Assembly (NCBI RefSeq): GCF_000315625.1
Contig: NW_005434668.1
Location: forward strand, 242,938 to 306,937
DNA length: 64,000 bases
Direction: 5' to 3'
Source of the DNA: Guillardia theta CCMP2712
Taxonomy: Eukaryota > Protista > Cryptophyta
Made by a program: the position numbers and the translations under genes. Positions within the stretch are counted from its first letter, which is position 1. Every line of letters starts with the position of its first letter. Under the pieces are notes generated by a model. That model saw only the letters and a list, made by a program, of their open reading frames with translations. It had not been told where the DNA came from and made no database searches. This document shows, piece after piece, positions 31,936-59,887 of this stretch.

Positions 31936-34900
31936 ATGAGAAGGCTTAAGATGAACAAACGCTTTTGTTGTCTGGCATGTTTGATGATGGCAGCCTACAG
32001 GACAGTAGCTGGCGAATTTTCGATCAAAACAATTTCACAATCCAATCCTTTGATCGGAGCATATAACACAATCACTGTCACTCTGCAAACAACAATCAAT
32101 CTGTCATATACAGACAACTCCGTATTGACTATATCTGGATTTCAGAACGCAACTGTTTCGAATCCGGCTGATCTCACAGCACTGGACGCAAATGCTGTAA
32201 ATCTTTTTTCGAATGGCACAACACCAAATACAGGACTATGGAGCAATGGTAACCTTATCCTAAACTTGTATGATGGGAAGACACTTGTAAATGGAGACAC
32301 TTATTCTTTTTCTTTTGTATTACAAAATCCTACAAAACCTCAGGACGCAACCTCAATACACATCTCATCAAGCGGAAACGTGAGCATTCCTGCCAGTCAA
32401 ATGACATCGGACAATTCAACAGCTCTTGGTGTATCATCCGGTGCTTCTCCCTTACTAGTAGTGCAACCAACATTTGAGTTCACTTATGTACAGCAAAAAT
32501 ATTCTCTGCCAGACATTGAAAACACCATAACGTTGACGGTACAAAGTAATGTGGATTTCATCCAGGGAACTATCATATCTTTGACGGGCTTCAAGAACTT
32601 TCAGACTCAGACAGGAAACATAACTTACTCCAGCAACTTCAACATATATGCCGACACAGCGATTTGGAATTTGACAAGCCAAAGCTTCCAATTCAAAATC
32701 CAAGGTCAAACTACCTCATACACAAACTACTACATAAGTTTCAATTTACAGAGTCCGAGCTCTTCACAGTTGGCAAATGACATCCAAATTCAAGCCGAGA
32801 TTCCGAATAGAAACAACCCGATCTACACCACAACACAAACGCTCAGCCCCAGCAACGCAAGCTCCTTGGGAGTTCAGGACGGACAAAAGCCAGGATACAT
32901 AGTAACCCCTATATTCGCAACAAGGTCTATCCAGCAGACCACGCCGGTGACCGGGGCGACAAACACGCTGACGGTGACGCTGGCAGCAAACTACGACCTG
33001 GCCGCAGGCTCCACCGTGACGATCCTCGGGCTCACGGGGTCGCAGACGGGCGACAGCAGCAGCCTGGCGGTGAGCTCTACGAGCGGAGTGCTGGGGACGA
33101 GCGGGGCGTGGGTACAGGCGAGCGGGACTCTGGTGCTTACCAGCTCGGGGGGAGGCATGGTGTCGGGAGCGTCGTACGAGGTGACGTTCAACCTCACCAA
33201 CCCCTCGTCAAGCCAGTCGTCGCCGGGGGCGAACGTGAGCGGGGTCATCGAGTCCGGAGGGTCCGCGGTGGGGTCGATCAGCGGGGAGGTGATGGACACG
33301 AGGGGGTCTACCTCACTGTATGGGGTGTCGAGCGGGTACTTGCCGCTTGAGGTACTGCTGCCTAGCTTCAGCACGAGGTCTATCCAGCAGAGCACGCCGG
33401 TGACCGGGGCGACAAACACGCTGACGGTGACGCTGGCAGCACCAGGGTTATAATATTAACGCTAATAAATGACGATCCTCGGGCTCACGGGGTCGCAGAC
33501 GGGCGACAGCAGCAGCCTGGCGGTGAGCTCTACGAGCGGAGTGCTGGGGACGAGCGGGGCGTGGGTACAGGCGAGCGGGACTCTGGTGCTTACCAGCTCG
33601 GGGGGAGGCATGGTGTCGGGAGCGTCGTACGAGGTGACGTTCAACCTCACCAACCCCTCGTCAAGCCAGTCGTCGCCGGGGGCGAACGTGAGCGGGGTCA
33701 TCGAGTCCGGAGGGTCCGCGGTGGGGTCGATCAGCGGGGAGGTGATGGACACGAGGGGGTCTACCTCACTGTATGGGGTGTCGAGCGGGTACTTGCCGCT
33801 TGAGGTACTGCTGCCTAGCTTCAGCACGAGGTCTATCCAGCAGAGCACGCCGGTGACCGGGGCGACAAACACGCTGACGGTGATGCTGGCAGCAAACTAC
33901 GATCTGGCCGCAGGCTCCACCGTGACGATCCTCGGGCTCACGGGGTCGCAGACGGGCGACAGCAGCAGCCTGGCGGTGAGCTCTACGAGCGGAGTGCTGG
34001 GGACGAGCGGGGCGTGGGTACAGGCGAGCGGGACTCTGGTGCTTACCAGCTCGGGGGGAGGCATGGTGTCGGGAGCGTCGTACGAGGTGACGTTCAACCT
34101 CACCAACCCCTCGTCAAGCCAGTCGTCGCCGGGGGCGAACGTGAGCGGGGTCATCGAGTCCGGAGGGTCCGCGGTGGGGTCGATCAGCGGGGAGGTGATG
34201 GACACGAGGGGGTCTACCTCACTGTATGGGGTGTCGAGCGGGTACTTGCCGCTTGAGGTACTGCTGCCTAGCTTCAGCACGAGGTCTATCCAGCAGAGCA
34301 CTGCCATCTATAGTCACGTTTCCCACGCTGACGGTGACGTTGCAGCAAACTACGACCTGGCCGCAGGCTCCACCGTGACGATCCTCGGGCTCACGGGGTC
34401 GCAGACGGGCGACAGCAGCAGCCTGGCGGTGAGCTCTACGAGCGGAGTGCTGGGGACGAGCGGGGCGTGGGTACAGGCGAGCGGGACTCTGGTGCTTACC
34501 AGCTCGGGGGGAGGCATGGTGTCGGGAGCGTCGTACGAGGTGACGTTCAACCTCACCAACCCCTCGTCAAGCCAGTCGTCGCCGGGGGCGAACGTGAGCG
34601 GGGTCATCGAGTCCGGAGGGTCCGCGGTGGGGTCGATCAGCGGGGAGGTGATGGACACGAGGGGGTCTACCTCACTGTATGGGGTGTCGAGCGGGTACTT
34701 GCCGCTTGAGGTACTGCTGCCTAGCTTCAGCACGAGGTCTATCCAGCAGAGCACGCCGGTGACCGGGGCGACAAACACGCTGACGGTGACGCTGGCAGCA
34801 AACTACGATCTGGCCGCAGGCTCCACCGTGACGATCCTCGGGCTCACGGGGTCGCAGACGGGCGACAGCAGCAGCCTGGCGGTGAGCTCATCTTCGATTT

Positions 34901-37900
34901 ATTTCAGTTCCACTGGTGAATGGAATTCCTACTCTGGGAAGCTTGTTATTTCCTTGGTTTCATTGATTTCTTCGAACTCCAATGTTTCTTTCTCGTTTCA
35001 GTTGTTGAATCCTGCTTTCGATCACTCTGCAGATAATGTTTCTTTGTCGGGTACTTCGCTATTGAACGGAAGTTTGATTTGCACCTTCGATGTTCGATCA
35101 TTTGAGTTCAACTATAACTTTTATCTTGGCTTGCAATATGGTTACCTTCCTTTCTTTGTCATCACCCCCACGTTTGAGACTGTGGTGATGGTTCAGAGGT
35201 CTCCGTTTGTTGATTCAATCAATGTAGTGACAGTGTCGATCCGAGCGAACATACAAATCCCTGCTGGCTCCCAATTACAAATAAGTGGTCTCGACGGCGC
35301 TTACGCTGATTCCTCTTCCGCCCCCTTGTCTTACACAGCTGGATATCTCCCATACTCCAATGTTACCTATGCCCCGGTTGCCTCAAACTATACCGTGTCC
35401 TACAACTCTTCCAGTCTTGATTGCACCCTCTCGAACTGCTCCTGCACCGATGGTATACCTGCTGGCCCTGCCTCCTGCGGGTGTCAATGTGTTGCGGTGT
35501 GTTCGAGCGACATCTGCTCTTGCTCTCTCTCTGGGTCGCCGAGCGGTCCTGCACAGTGCGGCTGTCAGTGTGTGAGGCCCTCCTGCGGCAGCTGCAGCTG
35601 TGATGAGAACGGGAACCCTTCTGGGAATCCCCTTTGCCAGTGCGGGTGCATGGCGAACGCTACTACCGATGCAGTCGACTACTTTTCGAATGGCACAACG
35701 CAGTCATTCGGTCTGTTTACAGCGAGTGCCCTTACCTTGACTGTGGTGAAGAGTCTCTACGTCAACACCTTGTATTCTTTCAATTTCCAGTTCCATAACC
35801 CGTCTGCGCCGCAGTCAGCTCCCGCGGTGTACATATCGGTGAATGGGTCAATCACTTTTGGGTTGCAGCGGATCTACAATCAGAATCTCACGATATTTGG
35901 CGTGAGCAACGGAGGAAATGTACTGGAGATCATCCAGCCGAGCTTTGTACAAGCTCTGATGACACAAGCCACACCTGTAGCCGGAGTCTTGAACTCCTTG
36001 ACTTTGACCTTGCAGATGAACTGCAACCTTCCTGCTGGCTCTGAAGTAACGATCTCTGGACTGTATGGCGCAAGCACAGAGAACTCTTCCCTGGCCATCT
36101 CATCAAGTCCGAGTCACTTCCAGCAAGTGGGGGTGTGGAGCCGAGCGAATGGTACTCTGGTGATGACAAGCGCAGGGGCATACTCACTTACTAGTTACAC
36201 GATCATTTTCAACCTGACCAACGGGGGGATCGATCAGACATCGCCTTCGCAGTATGCAAGTGGATATGTTCAGCTAGGAATGTACGGCCAGTCTATGTTT
36301 GATTTGAACAAACTGCACGAGAGCATCCTTGGGGTGACGAATGGCTCCGATCCTTTACAACTGGTTACGCCAGTTTTTTCCTTTGGGTACATTTTCCAAA
36401 ATTCTCCTTTGCCATCTGCCTCGAATTCTATGTTTGTTAGTTTCGAAACCAACGTCAACCTTGAAAGAGGCTCAATCATTACGCTGTCGAACCTCATTTA
36501 TGCAAGCTTCGATAAAGCTTTCATTGAGATATACAACTCTACTTTTCAGCAGGATTTTCATTTTGTGGCGAATTCTACAGGGGGGTATGGCTCAGTCCAA
36601 CCCGGACTGTACAACACCATTCTTTTGACAGTCGAGACTGCAATACTTTCATTTGAACAGATACACTTTTCATTCGATATCCGAAATCCCAGTATCTCAT
36701 ACCTTGACATCCATTCAAACGAATCTGCATGTGCGGATGCCTCGAGCTGTACGTGCAGCAGCTTGTGCGGATGCAACCAATATCAGAGTTTTGATGGGCT
36801 CTTGCAATTTGCTGACATTTTTCTCCACAATGATTTGATTTGCCTCTGGAAGATTAATCTTCCAATCCCCGGGTCGCTGAATGTATATGTTGACATCAGT
36901 TTTTTAAATTTGCAGTATTCCTCTATCACGCTTTCCACTCCATTTCTGATTGTATATCAGTGCTATGATGTATCTTGCAATCAAGCAGTTATTGTCAAGT
37001 CCATTGTGCAACTTACTCCTCACATATCATTTTCGATTAGCTCTCCAACTGGATTTGTCCAAATCAAGATGCCAGGAAATTTTTCGACAACTTTGTCACT
37101 GCAATACAATATTTCGATCTCATGGAACAGTACTCTACATCCTCCCGACATCTTTGTTGAAGCTCAAGGTACTCTAAATTCTTTCCCGCCCGGCGCTCCC
37201 TTCTTTCCCAGTGTTCTACTCAACACTTCGAATCAAAACGCCCTGGGAGTTAGAAATGGGTCCCAGGCACTTTACATCATTGTTCCAGAATTTGTTGTGC
37301 GGAACATTGGCCAAAGCAATCCTCTTGCTGGAGCTTCAAACAACATCACTCTGACACTTTCTACAAACTGTGATGTACCGTTTGGTTCAAATTTGACCAT
37401 ATCTGGATTGAAGAACACTTCAACTCCGGACAATTCTGCATTTCAAATAGTAGGTGGTCAATCGATCAATTCGCTTGGATCATGGATAGCAAATACTGGC
37501 ACTGTCGCTATGTCTTTAAACAACACTGGGCTCACTTCTTATTCTATTTACACAATAAGTTTCTCTGTGCAGAATATTGACATTGCACAGGCAGGCCAGC
37601 AAATATTTGTACATGGGCAGATCGAGTCTGGGAAGTATGATTCATACTTCCTCATTGGAATTCCTGGTGTTGGAATTCCTAGCAGCCAATATACCGATCT
37701 TGGTCTGATGAATTCTTCTACTGAGCCTGTGCAAGGCGTGTATCAAGGGAGGAGCCCAATGTACGTTATCATCCCACGTTTCCTTACTGCCCTGCTGAGT
37801 CAGAGTAACCCTCTTACGTCTGCAGAAAATGTTCTATCAGCAACTCTCAAAGCAAATTGTGATATAACCTCGGGTTCGACAGTAACACTGGTTGGCCTGA

Positions 37901-40900
37901 ATACCACACAAACTTTCGATTCAGCTAACTTTACACTGTTCTTTGATGAATCGACTGCAAATATTACGGGGTCGTGGATTCAGAGCCCTGGAATTCTTGA
38001 GATCAAATTCAATTCACTTCTTACATCCGATAACTATCTCTCCTTTTCATTCCATGTTCAGAATTCACAGACTTGGCAAATGTCTCCTTCGATTTCAGTA
38101 TCTGCAACGATATTTTTTGGAGCTCATGATTCCTTCATTCATGTAGCGGACATCGAAAAGGACAATGCTACAGTATTGGAAATAGTAGGCGGAAGATTGC
38201 CTCTATTCATAATACCACCAGGTCTCAATTTGGACACAACTCTGACCTGCAGTAGGTACTTTTCTGGATTACTTGCAGACTATGGTCGAGGATACAGCGA
38301 ACCATGTATCAGCCCTTTCTCATGGCCCTCACGAGTATATGATGGTGAGGAGGTCTTGTTAGACTACTCGAAGACAAGCTCGAAATGGTTCTCCTCCTTG
38401 GTCTCTCAGACGTGGCCATTCATCAATCAATCGAACAATCTTAGTCTGAGCATTGTTCCCAACTGCACCATAGCGAATGGCTCCTGGCTCGAGTTCAGCG
38501 GATTTTTGCAAACCCAAACTTTGACCAATCTCTCCTTTCCAATCGGCGGACTTCATGCATACCTATTTTCGGATGGGACATTTCCATCATCTGCCAGGTG
38601 GTTTCAAAACAATGGTACCCTGAAGATTCAATGCATCCAAGATCTCTTTGCCAATCAGAGTTATGAGATACATTTCACGGTAACCAACCCAAGTAATGGA
38701 CAGACATCTCCCACAATTTCTGTTTCCGGGCAAATAGCTGCAGGCGCATACTTCTCTGCTTTTCAATTCCAAAATCTGTCTGCGAAGACGAGCTTGTCGT
38801 CTGTATTCTCCAATTGGTTTGGATATTCGCAAGCATATCCCATTGAACGCCCGCTTGAAATTGTAGAAATCTCTTCGAGCGCAAACATAACCCAATTCAC
38901 GCCATTGACATTTGCTGATAACGTTTTGGGTGTATCATTTGTTTTCAATCTCCTTGCTTACTCCGCTCAGAATTCGCTTGGAGTGTGGACAGGCTCGTCT
39001 GCTTACGCGTTGACGGTTCGCTTTCCTTCGCAAAGTGTCAATACACTGACGACTTACACTACAATATCGATTATGGGTCTTACTGGGACTTTGACCCGAA
39101 GCAGTGTTTCAGGCCTCAGCATTTTACAAAGCCCATCCAATTCATGGACATCAACGTTGTTCGTTCAATCCTTCGGAGTATTTCTTTTGCAGACTACCTC
39201 TGGTTCTGTGTTCTTGACAGGTCGCACTTATCAAATATCTTTTTTGGTGCAGAATTCACAAGAACCCCAAGGTAAGAACTTCGAATGCGAAAGCGTTCAA
39301 TTTCTAATTGTCTTCTCATCAGCTTCGCCTCAAATCAACATGTATGCCAATTTGAATTTCGGGACATTTGTTTCAAGTTCAAGATCCGTTCCAGTCAAAT
39401 CCACAAACACAAGTCTGCAAGGCGTGCCATATGCTTCAGCGGCATTGTTTATCACACAGCCTTACATCAGCTTTAGCGCCATTGAACAAAGCGATCCTCT
39501 TGCTGGAGCCTTGAACAAGATATCGGTATGATGGCGCAAGCATATATGATACTTTAGTTCGTAATCCTATGTTTTTGCTTAGGTTAACATCTCGATGTCT
39601 TGTGACCTTGCGCCTGGATCTTCTCTCACAATTTCTGGAATCACTGGTTCAGCGACTTTGACAGTTGGTATTCTTCTATGACCTGACCCTGGCTCAGTCT
39701 GACTTTCATTGGACAGGATCTGGTTTTGAACTTGGGGGTCCCAATTCCTCTCTCTTTGTGGATTCTCAGAATCAAATCGGAAGAGCAGGGTGGGATCAGG
39801 TTACCGGCAGTCTCATTCTTCTTCTTGATCCTTACGGGAACACAGTAGCTTCCGAATCAGTTCTCAGAATCTTTTTCTATCTGACAAATTCACTCACACC
39901 TCAGATTTCACCTTCCATAGCTGTACGAGTGTTTATTCGTTCAGGGACGGTATCCGGCTTTTCCTTTACACACTTTTCCAGCATTCCTTCAACACAGCTC
40001 AATCCTGTGAATGTCTCTAAAATAGGTATCCTTGCGGGATCTCTGCCAGTGTACATTGTTGCAGCCACTACTGTTCTATCTCAGATTGTTCAGAGCAACC
40101 CGCTTGCAAACGCTGACAACACGCTGTCGGTCACGCTCAGGACGAATTGTGACCTTCAAGCCGCCAGCACCATCACGATCTCAGGGCTTGTCAACAGTCA
40201 GTCAGCAGATAGCGCTTGCTTGTCCTTGTATGGACCTAGTGCCTCACTGCTGTCCAACGGTACCCAAGCCTCATGCGGCATCTGGAACCAAGCTCAAGGG
40301 TCTCTGCGGCTTACTCTACTCAACGGTACTCTCAACTCGGAGTCAATAATTTTCTCTTTCAGCCTCGTGAACCCTTCCTCAGCGCAGGCCCCTCCGGACA
40401 TCTTTGTGTCAGGCTCGGTCGCAGGAGAAGGCAGCAGTGTTGCTCCCTTGTCGCAGGTGCTTATGACAACCTCCAACAGCAGCCGTCTCGGTGTGTCCCA
40501 GGGCGCTGGTGCTTTCAGGACGGTGCTCGCCTACTTCCAGGAGGCAGTGGTGGTACAGAGCAGCCCGCTTGCAAACGCTGACAACACGCTGTCGGTCACG
40601 CTCAGGACGAATTGTGACCTTCAAGCCGCCAGCACCATCACGATCTCAGGGCTTGTCAACAGTCAGTCAGCAGATAGCGCTTGCTTGTCCTTGTATGGAC
40701 CTAGTGCCTCACTGCTGTCCAACGGTACCCAAGCCTCATGCGGCATCTGGAACCAAGCTCAAGGGTCTCTGCGGCTTACTCTACTCAACGGTACTCTCAA
40801 CTCGGAGTCAATAATTTTCTCTTTCAGCCTCGTGAACCCTTCCTCAGCGCAGGCCCCTCCGGACATCTTTGTGTCAGGCTCGGTCGCAGGAGAAGGCAGC

Positions 40901-43900
40901 AGTGTTGCTCCCTTGTCGCAGGTGCTTATGACAACCTCCAACAGCAGCCGTCTCGGTGTGTCCCAGGGCGCTGGTGCTTTCAGGACGGTGCTCGCCTACT
41001 TCCAGGAGGCAGTGGTGGTACAGAGCAGCCCGCTTGCAAACGCTGACAACACGCTGTCGGTCACGCTCAGGACGAATTGTGACCTTCAAGCCGCCAGCAC
41101 CATCACGATCTCAGGGCTTGTCAACAGTCAGTCAGCAGATAGCGCTTGCTTGTCCTTGTATGGACCTAGTGCCTCACTGCTGTCCAACGGTACCCAAGCC
41201 TCATGCGGCATCTGGAACCAAGCTCAAGGGTCTCTGCGGCTTACTCTACTCAACGGTACTCTCAACTCGGAGTCAATAATTTTCTCTTTCAGCCTCGTGA
41301 ACCCTTCCTCAGCGCAGGCCCCTCCGGACATCTTTGTGTCAGGCTCGGTCGCAGGAGAAGGGATTTATGTGGCTCTCATCAAGACTTCGCTTCTTCTGCC
41401 GTCAAATTTCTCGCTTTCTGGATTGAATGAGAATCAAGCTCCCTTCTTCATCTTGATTGTGAGATTGAAAAACCTGAGCGCATTTCAAGAGAATCCTTTT
41501 GTGGGGCGATTGAATACATTTCATTTTTCTTTTGAGCCCAGCCTTCCATTGCTAGAGAACACGTCTCTGAAGATTACCGGGATGAATTTAGGATCTTTGA
41601 AGAGTGAATCGTCTTCTAACTTGACGATCTCTGCTTTCAATAGCACGAATGCTGTCGCTCAAGTTACAGCACTTTACAGCCAAGCTGATTCAACCATTTC
41701 GTGGGAACTTGTCGAGACATGGTATGTGGATTTGTACCATTTTACCTTTCAAGCCTACAATCCAAATTCTCCTCAACAATCGCCTAACATTAGTATGTGC
41801 GTGAAAAACGTTGTTTTTGTATGTTACAGCGTCACCAAGAAACTAAATGATGTTTTGGGTGTGACAACTGGTGCTCAGCCTCTGTATGTCGTTCAACCAT
41901 TTCAAGTTCGGCAAATTTATGGGTCAAGCAATTTAGCCGGAGGGCTCAATAATATCAGCGTTATGCTTCAAACCAAGATCAACTTTGCAGTACAGGACTC
42001 AATCTACATCTCCGGACTTTATGGAGCTGGAATTGTCACCACTGAAACGATTCCGATCTTCGATGAGGCAAACTCTGGCTCGACTTCTGCATTCGGAAAC
42101 AGTGCTGTCTATGATGGAACCACAGGCACACTTCGACTTATTGTCAACCATCTTATGGATGGAAATCATCTGTACTCCTTCTATTTTCAATTGAAAAATC
42201 CGTTATTTCTTCAACAAACTCATTTGACAATCTATGCTGTGTCAAGTGTAGCCAACGTTTCATCACTGACAATGAGTTTTTCCAACGCAACTGCACCTTT
42301 ATCTGTCTATGGCATACCGACATTCCATTCTCTTTCATTTGGAAATCCGAGAGCTGGTGCAAAGAGCAATATCACGATGGAGTTTACAGTTGGAATCGAA
42401 ATTGAATATGGATCATACATTTATTTCTCACTTCCATTCACAGCAAACCAGCATGTGTATTATCCAGTGTACATCAAAGCTAATGCCAATAGCCTTAATG
42501 TTACTGAGATTCTCTGGATCTCAGAGTCATCAAAAAGTTATCTAAGATTTGAATTAGGTCTGAATACTCCGTTCCCTTCCTCTGTAACACAATCGATTAC
42601 ACTGGAGTCGAACTTTTGGATCCCTGCATCCGGCATTCCCGCGAACAATTCTGATTTCAAGATGTTTATTTTCTCTCAGTCAACGACCCCGTTTCCTGTT
42701 TCAATCTCTCCATTCGTTGCACCTCTCTTCGAAGCGCTTTACGTCAATGCATTGTCTTTTGCCGTTCAGGCTTATGTCCCACAATTCAGCGAAAATCAAT
42801 TGACTTTGAAATCTGTCACTGAAATCGCGTCCACTAGTGACGAAATCCAGCTGGTCACTGAGTATTTAGCTTGTTCGACTGCTGCGTCACTGCAATCGTT
42901 GGCAATAGATTCGAACTTGTCATTTCACTTGGATTCAAGTTCCATGTTGACCGGAAATTATAGACTTTGTTATAGGAATCGATTTCAAAACTCAACAGGT
43001 ATTTCTACATTTTTTGTTGTGTCCATTTCTCAAGAATTTGTTTTTTCCAGATTTATTTACGGATACAGGACTTCTCGTATACATTCAAGGCATCATATCT
43101 AGTCTCTCCTTCTCCAACAGCACTTCTTTTGTTGAGGCCTTTGCTCCGAGAAATTCATTCACGGTAACCATCAACTCTGGTGCAGTTGTGAAAGTTGAAA
43201 ATCATTTTGTGACGCTGGTGCATGCGAATTATACCTGCCAAGACACTCCTCTACTGGTCCAAGGCGCTCTTTTCCCAGGGTTTAGCGTTGTGTCCTCATC
43301 GCTCTCAGCATACTTCGACTGGAAAGGTTGCAGTCCTCAAGGCACCCCTAAGATTTTCTCCGGAGCATGCCCGATCGAAGGGTTCTACCGTCTTTGCTTT
43401 TCAAGTAACTCTATCTCTACGAATGAGACGGGAATTTCTGTTCGAATCACTCAAATGCAGTTGAGTCTGAAGCCTAATTCCTCCATCATCAGCAATGTCG
43501 ATGGAAAATTTTTTCCACAGATTTCAATTCTTGTGGGAAGTAGCTTCCAGTCGTGTTGTTTTGATACCTTGGTATATGTCACTTTGATTAAGGATGGTCA
43601 AACAGATTTGGGGACTTTTTTGTATGGCAATTACAATTCAAACGAAGATGTCTTCAAGACTCTTTCATGCAACCAAATTTGTTTGTTTCCATCCATCAAT
43701 GTACAGCATACTGGGGGCAACGGTTTCCAGCTTTTGTTCAGTACCCCTGGAGCTACTGTAATTTCCAATGAATTTTCAATTTATCCCAAGGGACTAGCAA
43801 TTCTCACTGCAATACCTTCTCAATTGATAGTGCAGAGCAACCAGACTGTGTTGCTGCCTGATCCATTGGTCGTGTCAATGCAAGGCCTGCAGGAGAATAT

Positions 43901-49900: not shown

Positions 49901-49976
49901 GAGCCTGAATAGAGAATTGAAGACGATTTGGTGTGAACAAAGGTGTTTTGAATTTTGTGGTGGATTTGTCACATGA
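31936..49976 (+). CDS. Giant secreted repeat glycoprotein (~5,940 aa): many ~150-aa beta-sandwich repeats, Cys-rich inserts, CUB-like, FN3-like, IPT/TIG-like and C-terminal Cys-rich regions
   Basis: Signal peptide; four GT-AG introns (39272-39322, 39526-39582, 39668-39716, 42999-43050) join the ORF pieces in frame (17,832 nt = 5,944 codons); recurring QSNPL.GA.N.LTVTL..N.DL..GS.ITISGL unit. In-frame stops at 33451-33468 lie in an anomalous 28-nt patch (see findings). Confidence 0.8.
32923..34889 (+). repeat. 453-bp (151-aa) coding tandem repeat, ~4.3 near-identical GC-rich copies
   Basis: Identical shadow ORFs at 33108, 33561, 34014 and 34467 (period 453). Confidence 0.95.
40091..41361 (+). 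repeat. 465-bp (155-aa) coding tandem repeat, ~2.7 near-identical copies
   Basis: Identical shadow ORFs at 40273, 40738 and 41203 (period 465). Confidence 0.95.
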
Positions 49977-50007
49977 GATCATGTCATTATGATTCTTTTA
50001 TCATTTA

Positions 50008-53000
50008 TTACACAACATCAAAAGTTGCGCTGTCTGCAGATTCCACCGACCAAGCAAAGCTTTCACAAGAAAAATTGATAATGTAACCTTGGAACGGGCC
50101 GGCTATCCCTAAATCAGTGAAAGTATACAACTTTGGAAGATTATTCTCGGCATACGATTGCACAACAGCAAACTTATTTCCAAAAATCATTCCATTTCTT
50201 GAACCGCTACCGATTTTGATCTCAGCAAGTACCTTGCAACATCAATCACCCTGCCCGCCTGACATTCATAAAGAACAAACACCTTTGCAGTTTGATGCGT
50301 TGGGATAGAGTTGTTATGCGAGTCAAGAAATACAACTTGGGGTTGAACGCTGAAAGCAACCTAAAATCGTTGACACGTTCAGCAATCTCGCTATAGTGCA
50401 TGAGACATCACCCCAGATTTGATAACAAGATCATTCGACCAGATCACCTTGATCTTAGTCGGTCCTAAAACTGCAGGAGCATTCAGCAAGTCTCTGAAAG
50501 GGTTCCAAAGTACCTTCGAAGGTCTCGCTGTCTGCAGAGAAGAGGGACGGAGCCGTGAAACGGATCTTGTATGTCATTCTAGGCTGTGAAAAGACTATAT
50601 CTGTGAAGACTGCTATCCCATTCCTTGTGATTGAACTCTTTGACGACAACTCCTAATCCAAGGCGATAAGATTACGTCAAGTCGTCCAGAGTCCCTTATA
50701 CCATTATCTCAGAAGCCCCATAGCCGTCATAGATAATCGCCAGTTGAACGATGACATCGTTGGCTCGTTCAACGACCTGCGCATTGATGTCTGGTTAGTT
50801 CAGATCGCTTGCCACCCTTCTCTTACTCTCGCATCAGAATCATGTATGAAGACGATGGGGGGAGGATAAATTGCTTTGTCGATGAAAAAAGTTCCATTGG
50901 TAAATTGCAGGTAGAGCTTTTGCGCAATACTGGTGACAGAAAACCTCCTTGATTCTGCCATCTGCAAGTCTGCCGACGAAAATCGGAGGAAATAAAAATT
51001 TCCTGGGCTAGTCAAAAGGATTGATATTAGGTAGATGTAATAAAGTGGAAAATTGATTGTACGTGTTGATTTGAATTCGTGTGAACTCAGCCAGTCCGCT
51101 TTGAACTGATGCAACCAAAATGCTGGAGTTTGAAGCTTCTGACTAAGCAAAGATTACACATTCGTTGAAGAAAAATAACAATCAAGTAAAATTACTTTTT
51201 CGATCAGATTCGCGTTTTGCTTGAAAACTTCGACCTTGACTAGAGTATCTTTCCTTGGCCTTAAAAATTCAGAAGTGGCAGAATAACTTATGTTCCAAAT
51301 TCGATTTCCCCCCTCGTCCACGACCTAATTCAAATAGCTGAATGAAATTAACGATCACTCGATAGAATCGAATTACCAGTACAGATGGCCTCGAGTAGAT
51401 GTACTCTCCTGCCATCGCCCCGTAGGGTTCGATGAGAATAGCTAACCTTGACGGACGGCCTGATTGACAAGCTTTGAGCATCAAACTATCCCTTCACTTC
51501 CAAGCAGACCTGTGGTGATAATAACAGGCAAGGAATCGACAGACTTGAGGTTCAGACTTGAGAAGCGAATGGTGTAGTCTTGCCCTGCTCTATCGATGCG
51601 TAGCCCTGCAAAGGAAGCATGGCCATCTTTGACCTGAGAGATTTTCAATGTCTTTCAAGTGGTTGGTCGTGATGCATATTCACCTCTGCAGTCAAAACCT
51701 CGCCTGGCTGCTTCTCGCAAAGTTGGCCGTCAACATCGACTCGACAATCGGGTCTGCTGCTGTTGAAGAACTTTGACAAGATCATTCATACACAGGTACT
51801 TTTCAACGACATGATACCATGAGAAATGACGTTTTGCTTCCTTTGAGTAACTCAGCTCTTATGTGATCTGTCCAGTTTGCAACCACGTTGTAGCCGTCAT
51901 CAACTACTTGAATCTGTTTATAGAGAGTATGACTCCATTTGAAAATCAATGATCCAATAACAGCAACCTCAGGCTGTTGAGAAAACGGATAGCCAGGTGA
52001 ACCCAAATTGGGTTGAACGATGACAAGTAGAGCTTTTGCCAATCCAGTGATTACCTGCTCAGTATTATGCATCATCCCCGCTTGACCGAATTATTCACGC
52101 CGCAATACCGAGAAAGCTGTGGAGGACATTTGAAACCCAGCTCCGTTGGTAGTGAAAAAGTTGAAATAGAATGTTCCAACAGACATAACACGCAAATCCT
52201 TGAAAGACGCTTGCCCGTTGACGTACTCCACCTGCAGAAATCATGAGGATGAAACAGCAAGTAGCGGCAGCTACCATGAGATTCCCTGATAAGGCTGCGG
52301 TGACATCCTTGCCTTTGGAATCCGACAATGAAACATGGAAGTAAGATGATGATGAAATGACGTTGTTCCCTCCCTCGTCCACAATATGCAAGATTGGCTA
52401 ACAATGTCACTATGAAAGGAGTTTGTTAAGTTGAAGTAGGTCTACCTGCTTGCATACTGTTGTTCCTGCAACAAATCCCTGGAGCGAGCAAGGCAGCGGT
52501 TCTTGCAGGAATTTTAAACCATATGGTATGCCAGGATAAACTGTTACAAATATGAGGAAAGATCTCGATGAATTCAAAGATTCGAAACCTGAAAAGATGT
52601 CGGAAACTGCTTCTTTCAATCCATCACAAGACCAAACAATCCGATAACAAGACCCAACAGTCCAGATTCTGACTTGGGAGAAGGTGGCGACACCTGCTAC
52701 TGGTAAAGCTACATCGCAGAGTCAATCGTTTTTCTTTCCTCTTGCAAGATTGAAGTACCGATGTCTTGTGTCTCCATCAACGCTTGGTTGCTTGAGTTCA
52801 GATTGATTCTCACTGGGTATGAATTCCCGCTAAGAGTTTTGATAATATTTCCTCCGGCATCGGCGACACCTTCTTGCTGTCAACATCTTCACAACCTCCT
52901 CAATGTCCACCTGCAGCGCACGAGAACGTCTTGCCTGCCGCAACTGAAATCGGTTGAGAAGAAACGATGAGCTGAACAGCAGATCCCTGCCAGGCGTTCA

Positions 53001-56000
53001 GAGCAACAAGAGACACCTCAGAGTTTGACCTGTTGGACTGTGATGGCGACAACTGCAGGCAAGATCCCATCGGTGATGAAGACGATGGACCACAGGCCCG
53101 GGTTGTCGATGTGAAGGTCTGTGAACCTCACCGCACCTTGATCGAACTGTTGGACTGTCTGCCCCAGCAAGCCGTTGAGCTGAAGACTGATGCAAGTGCT
53201 GGCGCTGGTGCTGCAGCATTGAGGCATCGACCGGCAGATGTCGGGCATGAAGAGCGCTGCTGTCACTGTAGCTACCGAGGCTTCTTGTCGCTGATCCCGG
53301 ATTCGATTGCCTCCTGCATCCACCACAATCACTGCCGGCTGAATTGACAAAGGCTCTCCAGTGCTCGCGGCTGCAGTGATCTGATAGAGATCAATGCGCG
53401 AGGGTGTGTTGATCAGGATGTATATCCACTGTGTCCTTTGAACTATCGAGCCATCACGTAGCCTGCAAAAAAACTGCAGTAAATGTCTTCCAACCTTGTC
53501 GATTCTCAAGTCCGTGTATGTTCCAATTCCCTTTTCAAGTAGAATTGAGGTTGTTCCATAGATCTTTGCATCCGCGTAGTCGTAACCTACGTATCCACAA
53601 CAGCTTTGTGATGAAAGTATCGAGACATTGACAGGGATGGTGTTCTCCACGTCTACGATAACATCGTTGATGTCCATACTGGCAACCTTGGGCTGGATAG
53701 CAAAACTTGCATTGGCAAGATTTTCATTTGAGACGAGTTGCACTAAAGTCAGGCTACGGGCTCCAGCCGAGTCGGAAACATTGAAGTAGTCAGACTTGAG
53801 TTGTGCATCGTAATTGCTGGAGGCAAACAGAAGTTGTGCTTTCACCACACTCGAGGCAGAACTTACCGCCAAGTCTGTGAATGCAGCGACTCCTTTCAAG
53901 AAAGTTGCTGAGCTGGTGCCCACAAGTGTCACATCCGCAGCGGGTTGAGTTAAGAGCAACTGAGCCGTTACCCTCCCTTCATTCACCGGCACCAGGTTCC
54001 CTCCCGCGTCAACGGCCGTCAAGGACGGTTGGATGCGGAAGGGAGCGGAGGATCGGAACCCTTGAGCTGACTGCAGGAAGGCGAGGGAGCTTGGCTCTGA
54101 AGCAGCAGTCACTCTGAACACACCTGATTGTACAGGCTCAAGGAGAGGAGTCGAGAACAGCAGGGTAAATCCGTCTCCCGCAGCCTTGCAGTACAAGTCA
54201 GTGAACTGAGCATATCCATTGACAACCGAGATGTTCGAATTCCCATAGATCAGAAACTGTGACCGAGCTGTCCCTGCTTGTAGGAGCTTACACGACATCC
54301 AGGTTGAGACAGGAACGAGGTTATTATATGAATCTACAAGTGAAAGTCGAGGCTGAACTTTGAAGGAAATTCCCGATAGAATGTCATTCTGTGAAGGCAT
54401 GGACTCTACAGAGATTCGATGTGGATCTGAAGGCAATACGGTGAAATTTGACGAGAGAGCGGAAATCGTCTCATTCAAAGTGAACATGATCCTGAATGTT
54501 TGTCCATTGTTTGTGTTGAGCAAAGACAAGTCCGTGAAGATCGCCAGTCCCTTCACAACAACCACTTGGGTTGTGCCCTGCAATACCGGACAGGACTCAG
54601 GAAGCTTGCATGTCAAGGAAGCATTGACAGAACAAGTTTGAAATGGACACCAAGAAGCTGTGAGATTGTTTGTGTCGATGACTCTGATGACTGGCTGCCT
54701 CACAAACGGTGCTCCTGCTCTCACATACCTCTCTACATTCATCTCCACAGAGAGATTGTAAGGAGCACCAGCCACGTCGAACTGATCTGAGAAGACGGAA
54801 ACAATCTCATCATACGCCCATGAAGAGTCTAACAATCCCTTCTGAGTGGTGAAGGATAGCGAGACATGTTTCTCCTTCCCCATGATCACTATATCAGTGA
54901 ACACAGCCACACCAGCCTCAGTAAGAACTGTTCGATTTGAAAGTGACAATGATACAAGTGTCGATCTCAGTGCGACTGTTATCGGAACTCCTGACAATGC
55001 TACCAGGTTTCCTCCTTTGTCTCGAATGGCCACGGCAGGACTCCTCTGCAGCCTTGCCATGGACATGATTCCGTCAGGTTGTCTGAGCATGCTAATGTCC
55101 CATGCGGTGGAGGGAGTGAGAGTCAACAGGTTTGAAGCGACGGAAATGGCCTCGTCCTCATCCACCGTGAAATTCAGTCGAAAACTTCCGGCGGTGTCAA
55201 CTCGCAAGTCAGTAAAAGCTGCGTATCCGTCTTGAAAGCCAGCAGTCTCTTGCCCCTTGATCGAGATGCTTCTGGACGAGTGATCGATGGTCGCAGTCAC
55301 TTTGACTTGCGCATCCACGCATAGATTCCCAAACTTGTCCTTCAATGCTACTCTAGGTTGAGTCCCTAGCGGCTCCCCTGGTGCAGGAGCAGCTGGCTGT
55401 TGGACAAGGAGGAGGGAGGAAGGGGCCGCAGGTTTCACAAGGAAATGATCTGAGTCAGCGGACGCGAGTGGAAAGCTACTGAATCGCAGGAACAAGCATT
55501 CCCCTGCTATCGTAAGTACCAGACGAGAGAAAAAGACAACTCCGCTCTGAGTGAAGTCAGCAAGAAGGTCGATGAGGTTGTCGTTCTCAGCGCTGATCAC
55601 TGAAGCTGTCACCACGATCGAATCGCTCGACTCGATGAGGTTCGCAAACTTGTCCATGACGGCAACTTTCGGGGGAACTTGGCACTCAGCTCCCACTGAG
55701 CATCTTGCTGGCTGTTGCAGGACCTGCAACCGACTTGATTGACCGTATCGGATCTCGAAAGGTAGTGAAAGAGCCTCCATTGAAACCGACTGAGGTAACC
55801 CCATAGCGACGAACTTGATCAGAACGCACTTGCTCGCCTTGTACACTACAAGGTCTGTGAAGCGAAAGATGCCGTCCTGAGATGAAGGGAAGAAGCGACT
55901 GACTCCTTGAGTTTCATTGTTCTCATAGACAATCGCTTGCAGTAAGGCGTTGGTGCTGACGACCTTCCTTGCCTCGTCCAACATGGCGAGCTGGGGCTGT

Positions 56001-59000
56001 TGGACAAGGGCTACTCCTGCCTCGCCAGACAGTAGGAATGATGAGGGTTGAACGATGACCTCGAGGCTAGACGCGTCCATGGTGACGTCGAAGAAGTCGC
56101 TCGTAATCCCCAGCTCGAGCTCAACTGCCAAAAAGCTTAGCGCAAAGGTCCCGTTCTTGGAAAACATCAGATCTGAGAATTCGAGACTTCCGGCGAAGAA
56201 GGGAAACAGATTGGTTCTGGGGAGAACATCGGACGTGACGTCAACATTTGAAGATGAAAAGACTGTGACTCTCAAGTTTCCCGACGTTTGAATCTTATTC
56301 CCACCTGCGTCACTGACATCCACTATCGGCTGCTCTAGACATTTTTGTTGGGCTACGCATCGACCGATCATACGACGCAATAGGAGTTGTTGAGCATTTC
56401 CCTTGCGAATCTGAAAAGGTTTGGAGAAGGCAATGAGTACTTTGGAATTGTTAATTCCAAAAGCTATGACTAGGTTGTCAGCAGCAATGTTGATTTTGAT
56501 GTTTGAAAACTTTGCAATGCCTTGAATAGATTTGGTAAGGTAAGGAAAATCTCCATCTGAGATACTGGTACCATTCATATACAGATTTGCAGAGACAGTT
56601 GTGTAGAAGTCGTCTTCAACGAGATTGTTGGCTGCATCCACAACTTGTAGAAGGGGTTGGGAGTTGAGAGGATAGCCGGCGACCCAGTCTAGCGGCTCTT
56701 GAACAAGGAGGAGGTTTGAAGCAAGACCGGGCGAGACAACCAACTGACCGACGTCAGACACGATCCACCCACATGTCACGCGGATGATGAAGTTACCAGC
56801 AGCTAGTGACGTGATGCGGAAGGAAGCTTTTCCGTTGACAGACACGTTGTCAAACCTGTTGACCTCCACTGCTTGTTCTCGAGACTGGCGGATGAGAACG
56901 GCACTGATTGCGTAACTTCCGGACGTGGCAACGACCCCGTACTGATCCAGCAGCTCGACAACAAGAGAAGGGGTCATCGTCTCATTGAAGGCAAGGCTTG
57001 TAGGATAAGTGAGGGGCCTTATCTCTACAGGCCCGTGGGACATCTGAAACCATCGGGAAGTGACGGATCGTATGGATTGTGTTGCACTCATAACGGAAAA
57101 TCTCAGGGACATCTTGCAAGGCTGAGCTAGAGAAACATTCGAGTCCTCGAGACTTTGGGGATCAAAGAACCCCTTGTGCTGGGCCTCTATCATCAGACCT
57201 GAGAACTGTAGCCTTCCCATCGTTGTGTTCCGCAAGAGAAATCCAGTCGTCGTCGTCAAAGTCGGCACTGATCCAGCAAAGAAATTGATCCCTGATACTC
57301 TCGGCGCACTGCCCGAGCTGGTACCCAGCACTCGCACAATGACCTTTTGGACCGCCGGAGAGCCTGTGCCGATGGTGAAGATGGAAACGGCCGAAACGTT
57401 CGATTTCTGATCCATCAACGTAGGCGAGTTTGACAAGGTTGAAATGGCAACGGGGGCAGTACCATCGTTTGAAAGCAGTTGGACGCTCGTCAAAGTGATA
57501 TCCCGACCGTTTGCCGTCAGCATGTACTTGATCATCACCTTTCGGATGTGATAAAGAGCCCCCAGATTGAACTTAAGGTCCCACGTCGAGAACAAGGCAG
57601 GCTCATAATACGTCAGATCGTTGTTGTCGACTAGAGGCTGGAATTCAAGGTTCTGGAGGATCCAAGAGATCTGCGGTTGTAGCCAGAAGTAGAAGGAAGT
57701 TCCATTGGTGATGAGCTCTGCAGTGATAGTAAAAATCTGATTGTCCACCACATTGTTGCCGGTATCGACAACGTGAACAATCGGCGGAACATCGAACTCC
57801 TTGGAGTATAGAAGTCCACTAGGCTCCTGGAAGAGGAGGAGCGATGAGGGATCTCCATACATCACCTCCAGCGTAAAGTTGAAGCCCAAGAGGTTTTGAG
57901 ACGCAAAGATGAGGCGAAAATTACCGATTCTCTTGAACAACAAGTCTGTGAAGGAAGCAACTCCAGCGACGAAACTGATCCTGCTGTTTCCAAAGAGCAA
58001 CGTATCTCCATCTCTCAAAGGATTGAAAGCTGACTGATTTAATATTTCTGCATACGCCACAACAGGAGGAGGCCATGATTTGTTCTGGTTGCCATATTTG
58101 TCCACTAAGATGAATGTCGGTTGAGGAGCCATTGCAATACCCGCCTTCGAGACCCGTGGTGGGATAAAGTTTGAAGGAGAAATCGCATATGCTGGACCAG
58201 GAAGAACGTTAAAAGTCCCCGTGAGGACAGTTGGAAGTGAGATATCTATTCCATCCAGGTTGAAAGCAAGAGTAAAGCGGAAGTAATACACGTAGTCTAC
58301 CTCCATTAGTGACACTTCGTTGGAGGCAAGGCCATCATAATCGACTGTTGCGTTCTTGTTGCCTTCGAAAGGCGCTTCTGTGTGAGTTGTGAACTTGATT
58401 CTGAAGAGTGTTGCCTGGACAACAGCCGGACGGCGATCAAACCAACCGAACGGCTCATCATACCTAGCTGACAGTTGAATCAGGAGCTGAATGGGAATGC
58501 CAGCATACAAGGGGAAAGGCAAAGCTTTCACCATATTGATTCTGTACGGATTATATCCCAAGACCATTCGCATTTGTGCCGTCGCTAACGGGTATGACGT
58601 AAAAAGCATGTTTGCTGATCTATCAGCTGTGTATATTCCCAAGTTTGAGTTTTGAAACGCGGATGATCCCTGTATCAGTCGGAATCTCAAAACGTCTTGA
58701 TAGATCTGAGTTAATGTCCCATTTGAGAACCACGATCCGAGCCTGCAAACATCTCTTGGAAAGCAAACTGCCGTAACTTCAAGGGCAGCATTCAGTACAA
58801 GATTTTGTCCAACATCTACTACATGTACTACAGGTTGAAGTTTGAATGGATAGCCAATCCTCAAACCTCTGGCTGGGCTCTTTATCACAATACTCTGAGG
58901 TTTGCCGTATGAAACATGGAACGTTTGAGAGGTAAGCCTTATGTCCTTCAATGTGCTTTGAGAAGGATAGAACGCTATTTCGACTTTCAAAAGATATGTC

Positions 59001-59887
59001 CCAATACGGTCAATGCGCAAGTCCGTGTAATAAAGGACTCCGCACCTTGTCTTTGCCATGAGATTCCCTTGCAAGGTGACAGATTCTGATTGGTTTCCTA
59101 CCGATTCCAAATTAATGGCAACGTCAGCGATTCCCATGCTGGTCTTGCTGTTACTACCAGACAGGGAAATAGCTGGCTGAGGGACCAAAACGTCGCTCAC
59201 AAAACCCATGCAAGGCATTTCCGCAATCGAAATGTTGTTACTTGACATGATTGTCTGGCCTTGCCCTGCCTTCGAATGTATCGTAGAATAGTTGGCACTG
59301 GATAACTCGCAGACTTCTAAAATTCTTGAGAAGACATCCAAGCAGAAATTACATCTTGAATCCTGACACTGCTGCAGTAAGTATGCCTGGTTGCGGCACA
59401 TGCGGTAAACCGTATAATAGCCACTTGAGTCAGGGATACATTCTTGTTCCTTCTGATACAGTACAGAGATTGGCGTCGAAGAGCACGACTCACTCAAATT
59501 CTTTGCATCATTCAAGAAAGTCTTCCGTACGTAGAAGTTGGTGTCCGGTCTCGCGGTCCAAGTGGATTGGCAGCTAGCAGAAGAGAAGTACCCTTCCTGG
59601 GTAGGCGTACACGAACTGATGACAGTTTGCTCGGTTTCACATGACTTGCACGACTCGTTGCAGAATCGTCGTATCACCACTCCCTGCTGACATGTCTCGA
59701 GTAGCCATCTTGCCTCCCTCGACTGATAGCATCGAGAACGAAGGAAGGAGCTCATTCGTACGACACTGGCCATGGAGCAATCAGAGGAAGAGTGCACGAA
59801 GCTTGTGAAGCCAGAAGTAGTCATGTCTTCACTGCCTTCCAAGCACGTGACCAGGATCAGCATCAGCCATATCAACCTCCCCGCCAT
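50008..59887 (-). CDS. Giant secreted protein (~3,000 aa) with tandem invasin/intimin-like Ig repeats and a Cys-rich N-terminus
   Basis: Signal MAGRLIWLMLILVTCLEGS; exon 1 is 59887-53030; recurring unit L...QP....G..L..QP.V.V.D..GN.V...G.A.FTDL.ID..G...L.F, which continues through many short exons to TAA at 50008. Confidence 0.85.

What the first reader, a model, noticed from the sequence alone, without database searches (positions are those of the whole stretch)
31936..59887. Convergent pair of giant secreted Ig-repeat proteins that share a module: candidate uncharacterised cell-surface structural system
Seen: 28 kb is taken up by two tail-to-tail genes (~5,940 and ~3,000 aa) with stop codons only 31 bp apart (49976/50008). 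Both have signal peptides, many N-glycosylation sequons and no obvious C-terminal TM anchor. The repeat that builds gene 2 (QP.V...G.A.F.DL...G...L.F) also appears within gene 1 at ~43500-45400 (e.g. SQGIASFYDLQVHFVVGAGYILRF, HVFRVQPAVAI). Inference: the two proteins are related and may be co-expressed subunits of an extracellular filament or coat (periplast surface layer, scales or flagellar hairs). I do not recognise either protein as characterised.
Basis: partly seen in the sequence, partly recalled or inferred. Interest (0 to 1): 0.8.

Follow-up and report, generated by a model that had tools for sequence, protein, structure and literature searches.

The report
Two adjacent giant Ig-repeat surface-protein genes
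Two very large secreted proteins built from antibody-like (Ig-fold) repeats sit tail-to-tail in the alga Guillardia theta, but each belongs to a big family of such genes in this genome and nothing shows that they work as a pair.

Summary
The window is Guillardia theta CCMP2712. A plus-strand gene of about 5,960 codons (31936-49976, 4 exons) and a minus-strand gene of about 2,900-3,000 codons (50008-59887, GUITHDRAFT_100931) end 31 bp apart. Both have signal-peptide-like N-termini, enriched N-glycosylation sequons and no membrane anchor.

- **Gene 2:** about 21 Big_1/invasin-type Ig domains, by profile link to bacterial giants and an AF2 model (pLDDT 91.6).
- **Gene 1:** about 23 copies of an unnamed 150-aa beta-sandwich repeat (AF2 pLDDT 94.7; similar to AgI/II and integrin calf domains). 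It also has 3-4 divergent Big_1-like domains, weak fn3 and TIG matches and a Cys-rich tail.
- **Shared module:** real but generic. It occurs in at least 26 giant reading frames at 14 other loci sampled, and is a conserved part of gene 1's own family.
- **Pairing:** not supported. Three paralogues and one metagenomic relative of gene 1's C-half have no gene-2-type neighbour. Transcript contigs show gene 1 about 100 times deeper than gene 2. Gene 1's roughly 1-kb 3'UTR appears to run antisense through gene 2's last exons.

Both have orthologues at about 70% identity in Hanusia phi, and neither is characterised. The scan had already noted similar giant genes elsewhere in this genome. Verdict: new members of a known kind.

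The parts
31936..49976 (+). Gene 1 coding region, 4 exons (31936-39525, 39583-39667, 39717-42998, 43051-49976), about 5,960 codons
   Evidence: ORFs; splice sites read; Hanusia P0097 bridges introns 1-2; Hanusia P0096 is 70% identical over the last exon
31936..32016 (+). Gene 1 signal-peptide-like N-terminus (MRRLKMNKRFCCLACLMMAAYRTVAG)
   Evidence: direct reading; no predictor was run
32017..42316 (+). Array of about 23 copies of a roughly 150-aa beta-sandwich repeat with no Pfam model, interrupted by Cys-rich inserts (e.g. 35425-35646)
   Evidence: self-HMM gives 23 domains; AF2 two-unit model pLDDT 94.7; closest folds are YcnI, AgI/II C-domains and integrin calf, Z about 10
32923..34889 (+). 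4.3 near-identical (94%) tandem copies, period 453 nt, GC-rich; a second block at 40091-41361 (2.7 copies, 99%)
   Evidence: composition
33442..33469 (+). 28-nt AT-rich patch of the same length as the repeat sequence it replaces, with four in-frame TAA codons; unique in the genome
43500..44768 (+). Three divergent Big_1-like Ig domains in gene 1 (the 'shared module'); a possible fourth runs to about 45460
   Evidence: the same module is present in paralogues and relatives
45456..45566 (+). fn3-like stretch, below the Pfam threshold (23.7 bits vs 25)
49122..49388 (+). IPT/TIG-like domain, below the Pfam threshold (17.6 bits vs 20.9)
49806..49973 (+). Conserved Cys-rich C-terminal tail, a hallmark of the family
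49977..51061 (+). Inferred 3'UTR of gene 1, antisense to gene 2's last exons; AATAAA at 50993 and 51041
   Evidence: contigs of three runs are collinear from 47600 to 51003, 51048 and 51061 with no joints across gene 2's introns; sequence; exon map
49977..50007 (.). 31-nt spacer between the two stop codons
50008..59887 (-). Gene 2 (GUITHDRAFT_100931): exon 1 at 53030-59887 plus at least 17 short exons, stop at 50008-50010
59822..59887 (-). Gene 2 signal-peptide-like N-terminus (MAGRLIWLMLILVTCLEGSEDM)
   Evidence: direct reading
53030..59203 (-). 15 Big_1/invasin-type Ig domains on exon 1 (about 6 more on the tail exons 50014-52983)
   Evidence: AF2 pLDDT 91.6; fold matches; link to bacterial Big_1/Invasin_D3
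56678..57685 (-). Roughly 330-aa non-repeat insert in gene 2; discoidin (F5/8 type C) plus Ig is a lead only
   Evidence: language-model feature hits of 0.88-0.89; no Pfam hit

Best explanation
These are two separate genes for giant secreted glycoproteins that happen to lie tail-to-tail. Each belongs to a different, heavily expanded Guillardia family of Ig-fold repeat proteins.

Gene 2 is a string of about 21 Big_1/invasin-type Ig domains behind a Cys-rich head, with one non-repeat insert that may bind ligand. Gene 1 is a longer mosaic:

- about 23 units of a 150-aa beta-sandwich;
- 3-4 Big_1-like domains;
- fn3- and TIG-like domains;
- a lineage-specific region;
- a Cys-rich C-terminal tail.

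By inference, both are exported through the ER, N-glycosylated and act outside the cell as long rod-like stalks, in a surface coat, matrix or adhesion role. With no membrane anchor, they would be held by protein-protein or disulfide contacts. The shared Ig module reflects domain shuffling within a common pool, not a specific partnership.

The close spacing makes their transcripts overlap at the 3' ends. Gene 1 is the strongly expressed one in the runs seen.
For: - **Organism and gene identity:**
- **Gene 2 repeats:**. Bacterial relatives carry Big_1, Invasin_D3 and Glyco_hydro2_C5. An HMM built from Guillardia (plus Hanusia) repeats finds 27 domains in bacterial P0003 that coincide with those Pfam stretches. 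AF2 gives pLDDT 91.6, and fold matches are GH2 C-terminal Ig domains, intimin D0-D1, InvE and S-layer proteins.
- **Gene 1 repeats:**
- **Both repeats are genome-wide families:** at least 138 and at least 150 matches, on contig sets that overlap only at this one.
- **Gene 1's C-half:** three paralogues keep the Ig module but have no gene-2-type neighbour within 10 kb. The same is true of metagenomic L055.
- **Architecture conserved elsewhere:** relatives P0103 and P0106 show 150-aa repeats, then Ig, then the C-half with its Cys-rich tail.
- **Unequal transcript depth and collinear contigs** running past the stop codon.
- **Sequon enrichment and no TM helix:**
- **Orthologues of both genes** at 69-72% identity in the Hanusia phi transcriptome.
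Against: - Immediate adjacency of one member of each family would be uncommon by chance. My rough estimate is a few percent, given tens of loci among roughly 25,000 genes (a figure from my recollection of the published annotation), so a functional link is not excluded.
- Localisation was not shown.
- The RNA status of runs X1, X2 and X4 is the tool's guess, and contig depth is a poor measure of expression.
- The in-frame TAA patch in gene 1 is unexplained.
- Own-genome hit lists are capped at the 150 best candidates.
Confidence: 0.6

Rival explanations
1. One reading: the two proteins are co-expressed subunits that co-assemble into one extracellular structure (surface periplast layer, scales or flagellar hairs), perhaps through the shared Ig modules.
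For: - Adjacency with stops 31 bp apart.
- Both are secreted-type Ig-repeat giants.
- A shared Big_1-like module.
- Both are conserved and transcribed in Hanusia.
[quoted passage not shown] 1997, seen only as a title in the reference list of PMC12223506).
Against: - The module is generic.
- Paralogues and relatives are unpaired.
- Depth is 431 against about 4 in X1, and gene 2 is absent from X2 and X4 over 52.5-53.5 kb.
- Convergent overlapping transcription does not favour joint expression.
Confidence: 0.12
2. The tail-to-tail overlap is regulatory. Gene 1's long 3'UTR is antisense to gene 2's last exons, so high gene 1 transcription suppresses gene 2, by transcriptional interference or double-stranded RNA. 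This would give alternative rather than joint expression of two surface proteins.
For: - Contigs from three studies run unspliced from gene 1 through the spacer to about 51.0 kb, across at least four gene 2 introns.
- AATAAA motifs lie on the plus strand next to the contig ends.
- Gene 2 is about 100 times lower or absent.
- The only gene 2 contigs are collinear with the genome across predicted introns.
Against: - The strand of the contigs is not known.
- Only 40 raw reads from the one true RNA run were laid.
- Low gene 2 expression may simply reflect its own promoter.
- No small-RNA data were available.
Confidence: 0.15
3. Gene 1 is broken. The four in-frame TAA codons at 33442-33469 are real, so only a 505-aa product, or none, is made from the first start, and the rest is a decaying or separately initiated gene.
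For: - The stops are in the assembly.
- A second unrelated patch of nearly equal length sits one repeat further on, at about 34302-34324.
Against: - The remaining 5,400 codons or so are open.
- They are 70-72% identical to Hanusia proteins.
- The 3' part is abundantly transcribed.
- The patch replaces exactly 28 nt inside a 94%-identical tandem array, where assembly errors are likely.
Confidence: 0.08

Closest known systems
Bacterial giant Big_1 / invasin-intimin-type Ig-repeat surface proteins (Gemmatimonadota, Myxococcota, Planctomycetota)
   Same: Gene 2's roughly 105-aa repeat is homologous (summed E down to 1e-128 at about 25% identity; reciprocal profile hits). It has the same predicted fold and the same long tandem-array layout.
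   Different: - It is a eukaryotic gene with introns and a eukaryotic-type signal peptide.
- It has no inverse-autotransporter beta-barrel or other bacterial anchor.
- No repeat reaches a Pfam threshold on its own.
Gram-positive antigen I/II C-terminal domains and MSCRAMM DEv-IgG domains; integrin alpha calf domains; YcnI
   Same: They share the predicted fold of gene 1's 150-aa unit (Z 9-10, rmsd 2.6-4.4), and both are used as tandem stalk units in adhesins.
   Different: - No sequence similarity (7-14% identity).
- No LPXTG motif.
- Isopeptide residues were not examined.
- Z of about 10 may reflect only a common beta-sandwich.
Other giant secreted repeat-protein genes of Guillardia theta noted by this scan (s1-433779, s1-430499, s1-437342)
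   Same: Same genome and the same theme: secreted proteins of thousands of residues built from Ig-like modules, conserved in the sister genus and uncharacterised.
   Different: The domain mixes differ. Here the unnamed 150-aa repeat is combined with Big_1-like modules, and two such genes abut.
REJ-domain giant gene on metagenome scaffold L001 (P0098)
   Same: It carries about 25 gene-1-type 150-aa repeats followed by fn3-type domains.
   Different: It continues into a REJ-domain reading frame, whereas gene 1 has no REJ match. No gene-2-type Ig domains are present.

Membership tests
Big_1 / Invasin_D3 / Glyco_hydro2_C5 / Ig_SMCHD1_6th bacterial-type Ig-like domains (gene 2 repeat) | Sequence match to the family profile | tested here: inconclusive
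   Direct Pfam scans of the window protein give nothing above threshold (best single repeat is Big_1 at E 0.12). PF26198 is listed as a precomputed hit for P0001. The link through other sequences is strong: relatives carry these domains, and the Guillardia-built HMM hits them at 27-62 bits.
Big_1 / Invasin_D3 bacterial-type Ig-like domains (gene 2 repeat) | Beta-sandwich of about 100 aa of the intimin/invasin type | tested here: met
   AF2 pLDDT 91.6. Foldseek finds GH2 C-terminal Ig domains, intimin D0-D1 and InvE. The best atlas match has TM 0.86 to an Ig_SMCHD1_6th cluster; the Big_1 and Invasin_D3 clusters themselves score about 0.58-0.65.
Inverse autotransporter adhesins (intimin/invasin proper) | N-terminal outer-membrane beta-barrel and C-terminal lectin-like tip | tested here: not met
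   No such Pfam or NCBIfam match. The N-terminus is a eukaryotic-type signal peptide followed by a Cys-rich region.
Big_1-like Ig module in gene 1 (the 'shared module') | Significant match to the gene-2-type domain profile | tested here: met
   Three near-full-length hits of 13-17 bits, repeated in the Hanusia orthologue. They exceed all 1,000 shuffles. Paralogues score 14-25 bits. hhalign with a two-sequence profile was weak.
Fibronectin type III (gene 1) | Pfam PF00041 at gathering score | tested here: not met
   23.7 bits against a cut-off of 25, and only a partial match.
IPT/TIG (gene 1) | Pfam PF01833 at gathering score | tested here: not met
   17.6 bits against 20.9, although the match is full length, 1-83 of 84.
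Polycystin-1/REJ-type receptors | REJ domain, GPS site and transmembrane region | tested here: not met
   No REJ hit in gene 1 and no TM helix. Only the relative on L001 has REJ.
Cryptophyte surface periplast component / flagellar hair proteins | Presence of the protein in that structure | not testable with these tools
   No proteome or sequence for these structures was found.

The most novel reading that the evidence does not exclude
Gene 1 is abundantly transcribed, secreted, anchorless and has a Cys-rich tail. It could encode the secreted high-molecular-mass polypeptide that self-assembles into the cryptophyte surface periplast. Its convergent overlap with gene 2 would then act as an antisense switch between two alternative surface proteins.
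Probability: 0.07. Interest if true: 0.65.

Novelty: new member of a known kind. Interest (0 to 1): 0.3.

Why it matters
The molecular make-up of the cryptophyte cell covering is still unknown. Guillardia encodes dozens of giant secreted Ig-repeat proteins that the public annotation models poorly.

This locus adds three things:

- Corrected gene models for two of these proteins.
- A confidently folded roughly 150-aa repeat with no Pfam model, which is very abundant in this genome and also present in other protists.
- A concrete case of 3'-overlapping convergent giant genes that could be tested for antisense interplay.

It is not a new kind of system.

Tried and rejected
- **Database scans.** Direct Pfam, NCBIfam and PDB-sequence searches of both proteins gave nothing above threshold. 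ESM Atlas feature search of gene 1's C-terminal 1,520 aa gave no usable hit.
- **hhalign.** Comparing the gene 2 repeat profile with gene 1 gave probability of 7% or less. It was superseded by the family-wide HMM with a shuffle control.
- **Synteny in relatives.** Two metagenome scans with gene 1's C-terminus found no relative. Only transcriptome-derived Hanusia proteins turned up in these searches. The exact look-up of P0001 was not on record.
- **Structure prediction.** I rebuilt it from window and own-genome sequences only.
- **Phage-like motif** in gene 1 (about 47.7 kb). Only 17-bit, 40-aa PHROG tail-fibre hits, so I treat it as a short motif, not a phage domain.
- **Literature.** No paper mentions GUITHDRAFT_100931 or bacterial Ig-like domains in Guillardia.
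- **Complex prediction.** Not run, because I do not claim that the proteins bind.
Full report
**Identity of the window.** The 2,289-aa minus-strand ORF is 100% identical to the hypothetical protein GUITHDRAFT_100931 of Guillardia theta CCMP2712 (P0001, 2,813 aa). The window is G000:C6:242938-306937. Upstream genes are unrelated: a kinesin, a dioxygenase and a PaO-like gene.

**Gene 1 structure.**
- Four long plus-strand ORFs join through three short GT-AG introns, each consistent in phase: 39526-39582, 39668-39716 and 42999-43050.
- The Hanusia phi transcript-derived protein P0097 (72% identity) bridges the first two introns. P0096 (70% identity) covers the last exon from 43455 to the stop.
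- The CDS is 17,883 nt, about 5,960 codons, ending in TGA at 49974-49976.

**Gene 2 structure.**
- Exon 1 is 53030-59887. The public model adds 16 short exons and then a last exon at 49500-49538, inside gene 1's coding sequence.
- Repeat-profile hits show two errors in that model. It skips an Ig repeat at 50929-51324. The frame after 50152 also simply continues through a well-matching repeat end (50014-50127, 17.5 bits) to TAA at 50008-50010.

**Sequence features.** Both N-termini look like signal peptides by direct reading. Sequons are enriched about 1.5-fold over shuffles in most pieces. The only hydrophobic 19-mers lie in repeat strands, not at the C-termini.

**Gene 2.**
- A repeat of about 105 aa occurs 15 times on exon 1 and about 6 more times on the tail exons.
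- Word-indexed search found a Hanusia orthologue (69% identity) and about 90 long bacterial or metagenomic proteins with summed E down to 1e-128 at about 25% identity. Many carry Big_1, Invasin_D3, Glyco_hydro2_C5 and PF26198. PF26198 is named Ig_SMCHD1_6th.
- An HMM built from Guillardia (plus Hanusia) repeats finds 27 full-length domains in bacterial P0003. These coincide with its Pfam Big_1, Invasin_D3 and Glyco_hydro2_C5 stretches.
- A two-unit AF2 model (pLDDT 91.6) matches GH2 C-terminal Ig domains, intimin D0-D1, InvE and S-layer proteins. It also matches bacterial Big_1-type clusters in the ESM Atlas, with TM up to 0.86.
- No single repeat passes a Pfam threshold.
- The insert at residues 735-1070 has discoidin plus Ig as a lead only.

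**Gene 1.**
- The first 3,500 residues or so hold about 23 copies of a roughly 150-aa repeat. These include two blocks of near-identical GC-rich tandem copies.
- A two-unit AF2 model is very confident (pLDDT 94.7, pTM 0.87).
- Each unit is a beta-sandwich closest to YcnI, antigen I/II C-domains, integrin calf domains and pilin domains (Z about 8-10). In the Atlas it is closest to an unnamed, mostly eukaryotic cluster (TM 0.89, 155 members), then to DUF11/isopeptide fimbrial proteins.
- The repeat has no Pfam model.
- Relatives include metagenomic P0098 and P0099. P0098 lies in a gene of at least 8,300 aa with about 25 such repeats, followed by a REJ-domain frame.
- The last exon holds 3-4 divergent Big_1-like domains, a sub-threshold fn3, a sub-threshold but full-length TIG and a conserved Cys-rich tail.
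- An exhaustive search with the last 1,200 residues found only 63 relatives (20 at E<=1e-30). Every source name found for the top hits was 'hypothetical protein' or a bare transcript id, and they come from Hanusia, MMETSP and metagenomes.
- Two relatives, P0103 and P0106, show the same order as gene 1: 150-aa repeats, then the C-half with its Cys-rich tail, with Big_1-type Ig hits in between in P0106. The architecture is therefore conserved beyond Guillardia.

**The shared module.**
- With a profile from gene 2 alone the match in gene 1 was marginal.
- With a profile of 160 domains from 14 paralogous loci, three near-full-length hits appear in gene 1. The same three appear in its Hanusia orthologue and exceed all 1,000 shuffles.
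- The module is real, but it is generic. The genome search gave at least 138 matches on 14 contigs. The fetched paralogous loci hold the domain in at least 26 reading frames.
- The three paralogues of gene 1's C-half carry the module too.

**Is it a pair?**
- Gene-1-type repeats give at least 150 scored matches (533 candidates) on about 20 contigs. Gene-2-type repeats lie on about 14. The two sets share only this contig.
- The three paralogues of gene 1's C-half have no gene-2-type domains within 10 kb downstream and no 150-aa repeats within 10 kb upstream.
- The metagenomic relative on L055 likewise has no gene-2-type neighbour.
- Orthologue synteny could not be tested.

**Expression.**
- Contigs of three runs from three studies are collinear with the genome from 47600 to 51003, 51048 and 51061, with no joints. 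They run past gene 1's stop, through the spacer and across at least four predicted gene 2 introns. They end beside plus-strand AATAAA motifs at 50993 and 51041.
- The simplest reading is a gene 1 3'UTR of about 1.0-1.1 kb that is antisense to gene 2's last exons.
- In X1 this contig has mean k-mer depth 431. Gene 2 is seen only as two short contigs at depth about 4, and these are collinear across predicted introns, so they could be pre-mRNA or DNA carry-over. X2 and X4 have nothing over 52.5-53.5 kb.
- Caveats: the tool only guesses that these runs are RNA, contig strand and local depth are unknown, and the one definite RNA run gave only 40 reads.
- Both orthologues do appear in the Hanusia transcriptome. 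The Hanusia gene 2 contig reads into the first intron.

**Conclusion.**
- The sequence observation is confirmed.
- The reading as two related, co-expressed subunits is not supported.
- The broader reading, uncharacterised extracellular Ig-repeat proteins, stands.
- Other agents of this scan reached the same kind of verdict for other giant genes of this genome.
- A periplast role remains an untested possibility. [quoted passage not shown] 1997, in the reference list of PMC12223506).

Noticed in passing
window 33442-33469: Inside a 94%-identical 453-nt tandem array, one copy has exactly 28 nt replaced by unrelated AT-rich sequence. The patch reads TAA four times in frame and is followed by ATG. 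It is unique in the genome. It could be an assembly artefact or a real disruption of gene 1.
   Followed up: partly
window about 34302-34324: One repeat unit further on there is a second patch of unrelated sequence, of nearly equal length. It changes 13 residues (AIYSHVSHADGDV in place of PVTGATNTLTVTL) without breaking the frame.
   Followed up: partly
window 49500-49538 and 50774-51373: The public model of GUITHDRAFT_100931 places its last exon inside gene 1's coding sequence on the other strand. It also treats 50774-51373 as one intron, although that stretch encodes pieces of a further Ig repeat.
   Followed up: yes
window 49977-51061: Probable gene 1 3'UTR of about 1 kb, lying antisense over at least six terminal exons of gene 2.
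   Followed up: partly
L001:950-25666: A metagenome scaffold (GROS21) carries one plus-strand gene of at least 8,300 aa, read as four abutting ORFs. It has about 25 gene-1-type 150-aa repeats and an fn3-type stretch (weak Pfam hit), then a REJ-domain frame. The repeat is thus also used in polycystin/REJ-like giants.
   Followed up: partly
window 50008-53029 versus 53030-59887: Gene 2 has one 6.9-kb intron-free exon followed by at least 17 exons of about 60-140 nt, separated by introns of about 45-55 nt. This is a sharp change of gene structure within a uniform repeat array.
   Followed up: no
window about 47700-47810 and about 48500-48700: A short motif of about 35 aa (a form of E-I-M-x-I/V ... 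R-G-x-L-x-T-x-x-A-x-H) occurs twice in gene 1. It gives weak PHROG tail-fibre hits (E about 2e-3). It appears to correspond to another first-reader note, s1-444118.
   Followed up: partly
G000 contigs C10, C79, C165, C72, C41: Own-genome hits for the two repeats fall in stop-free frames of 6,000-11,000 aa, so there are further very large repeat-protein genes.
   Followed up: no
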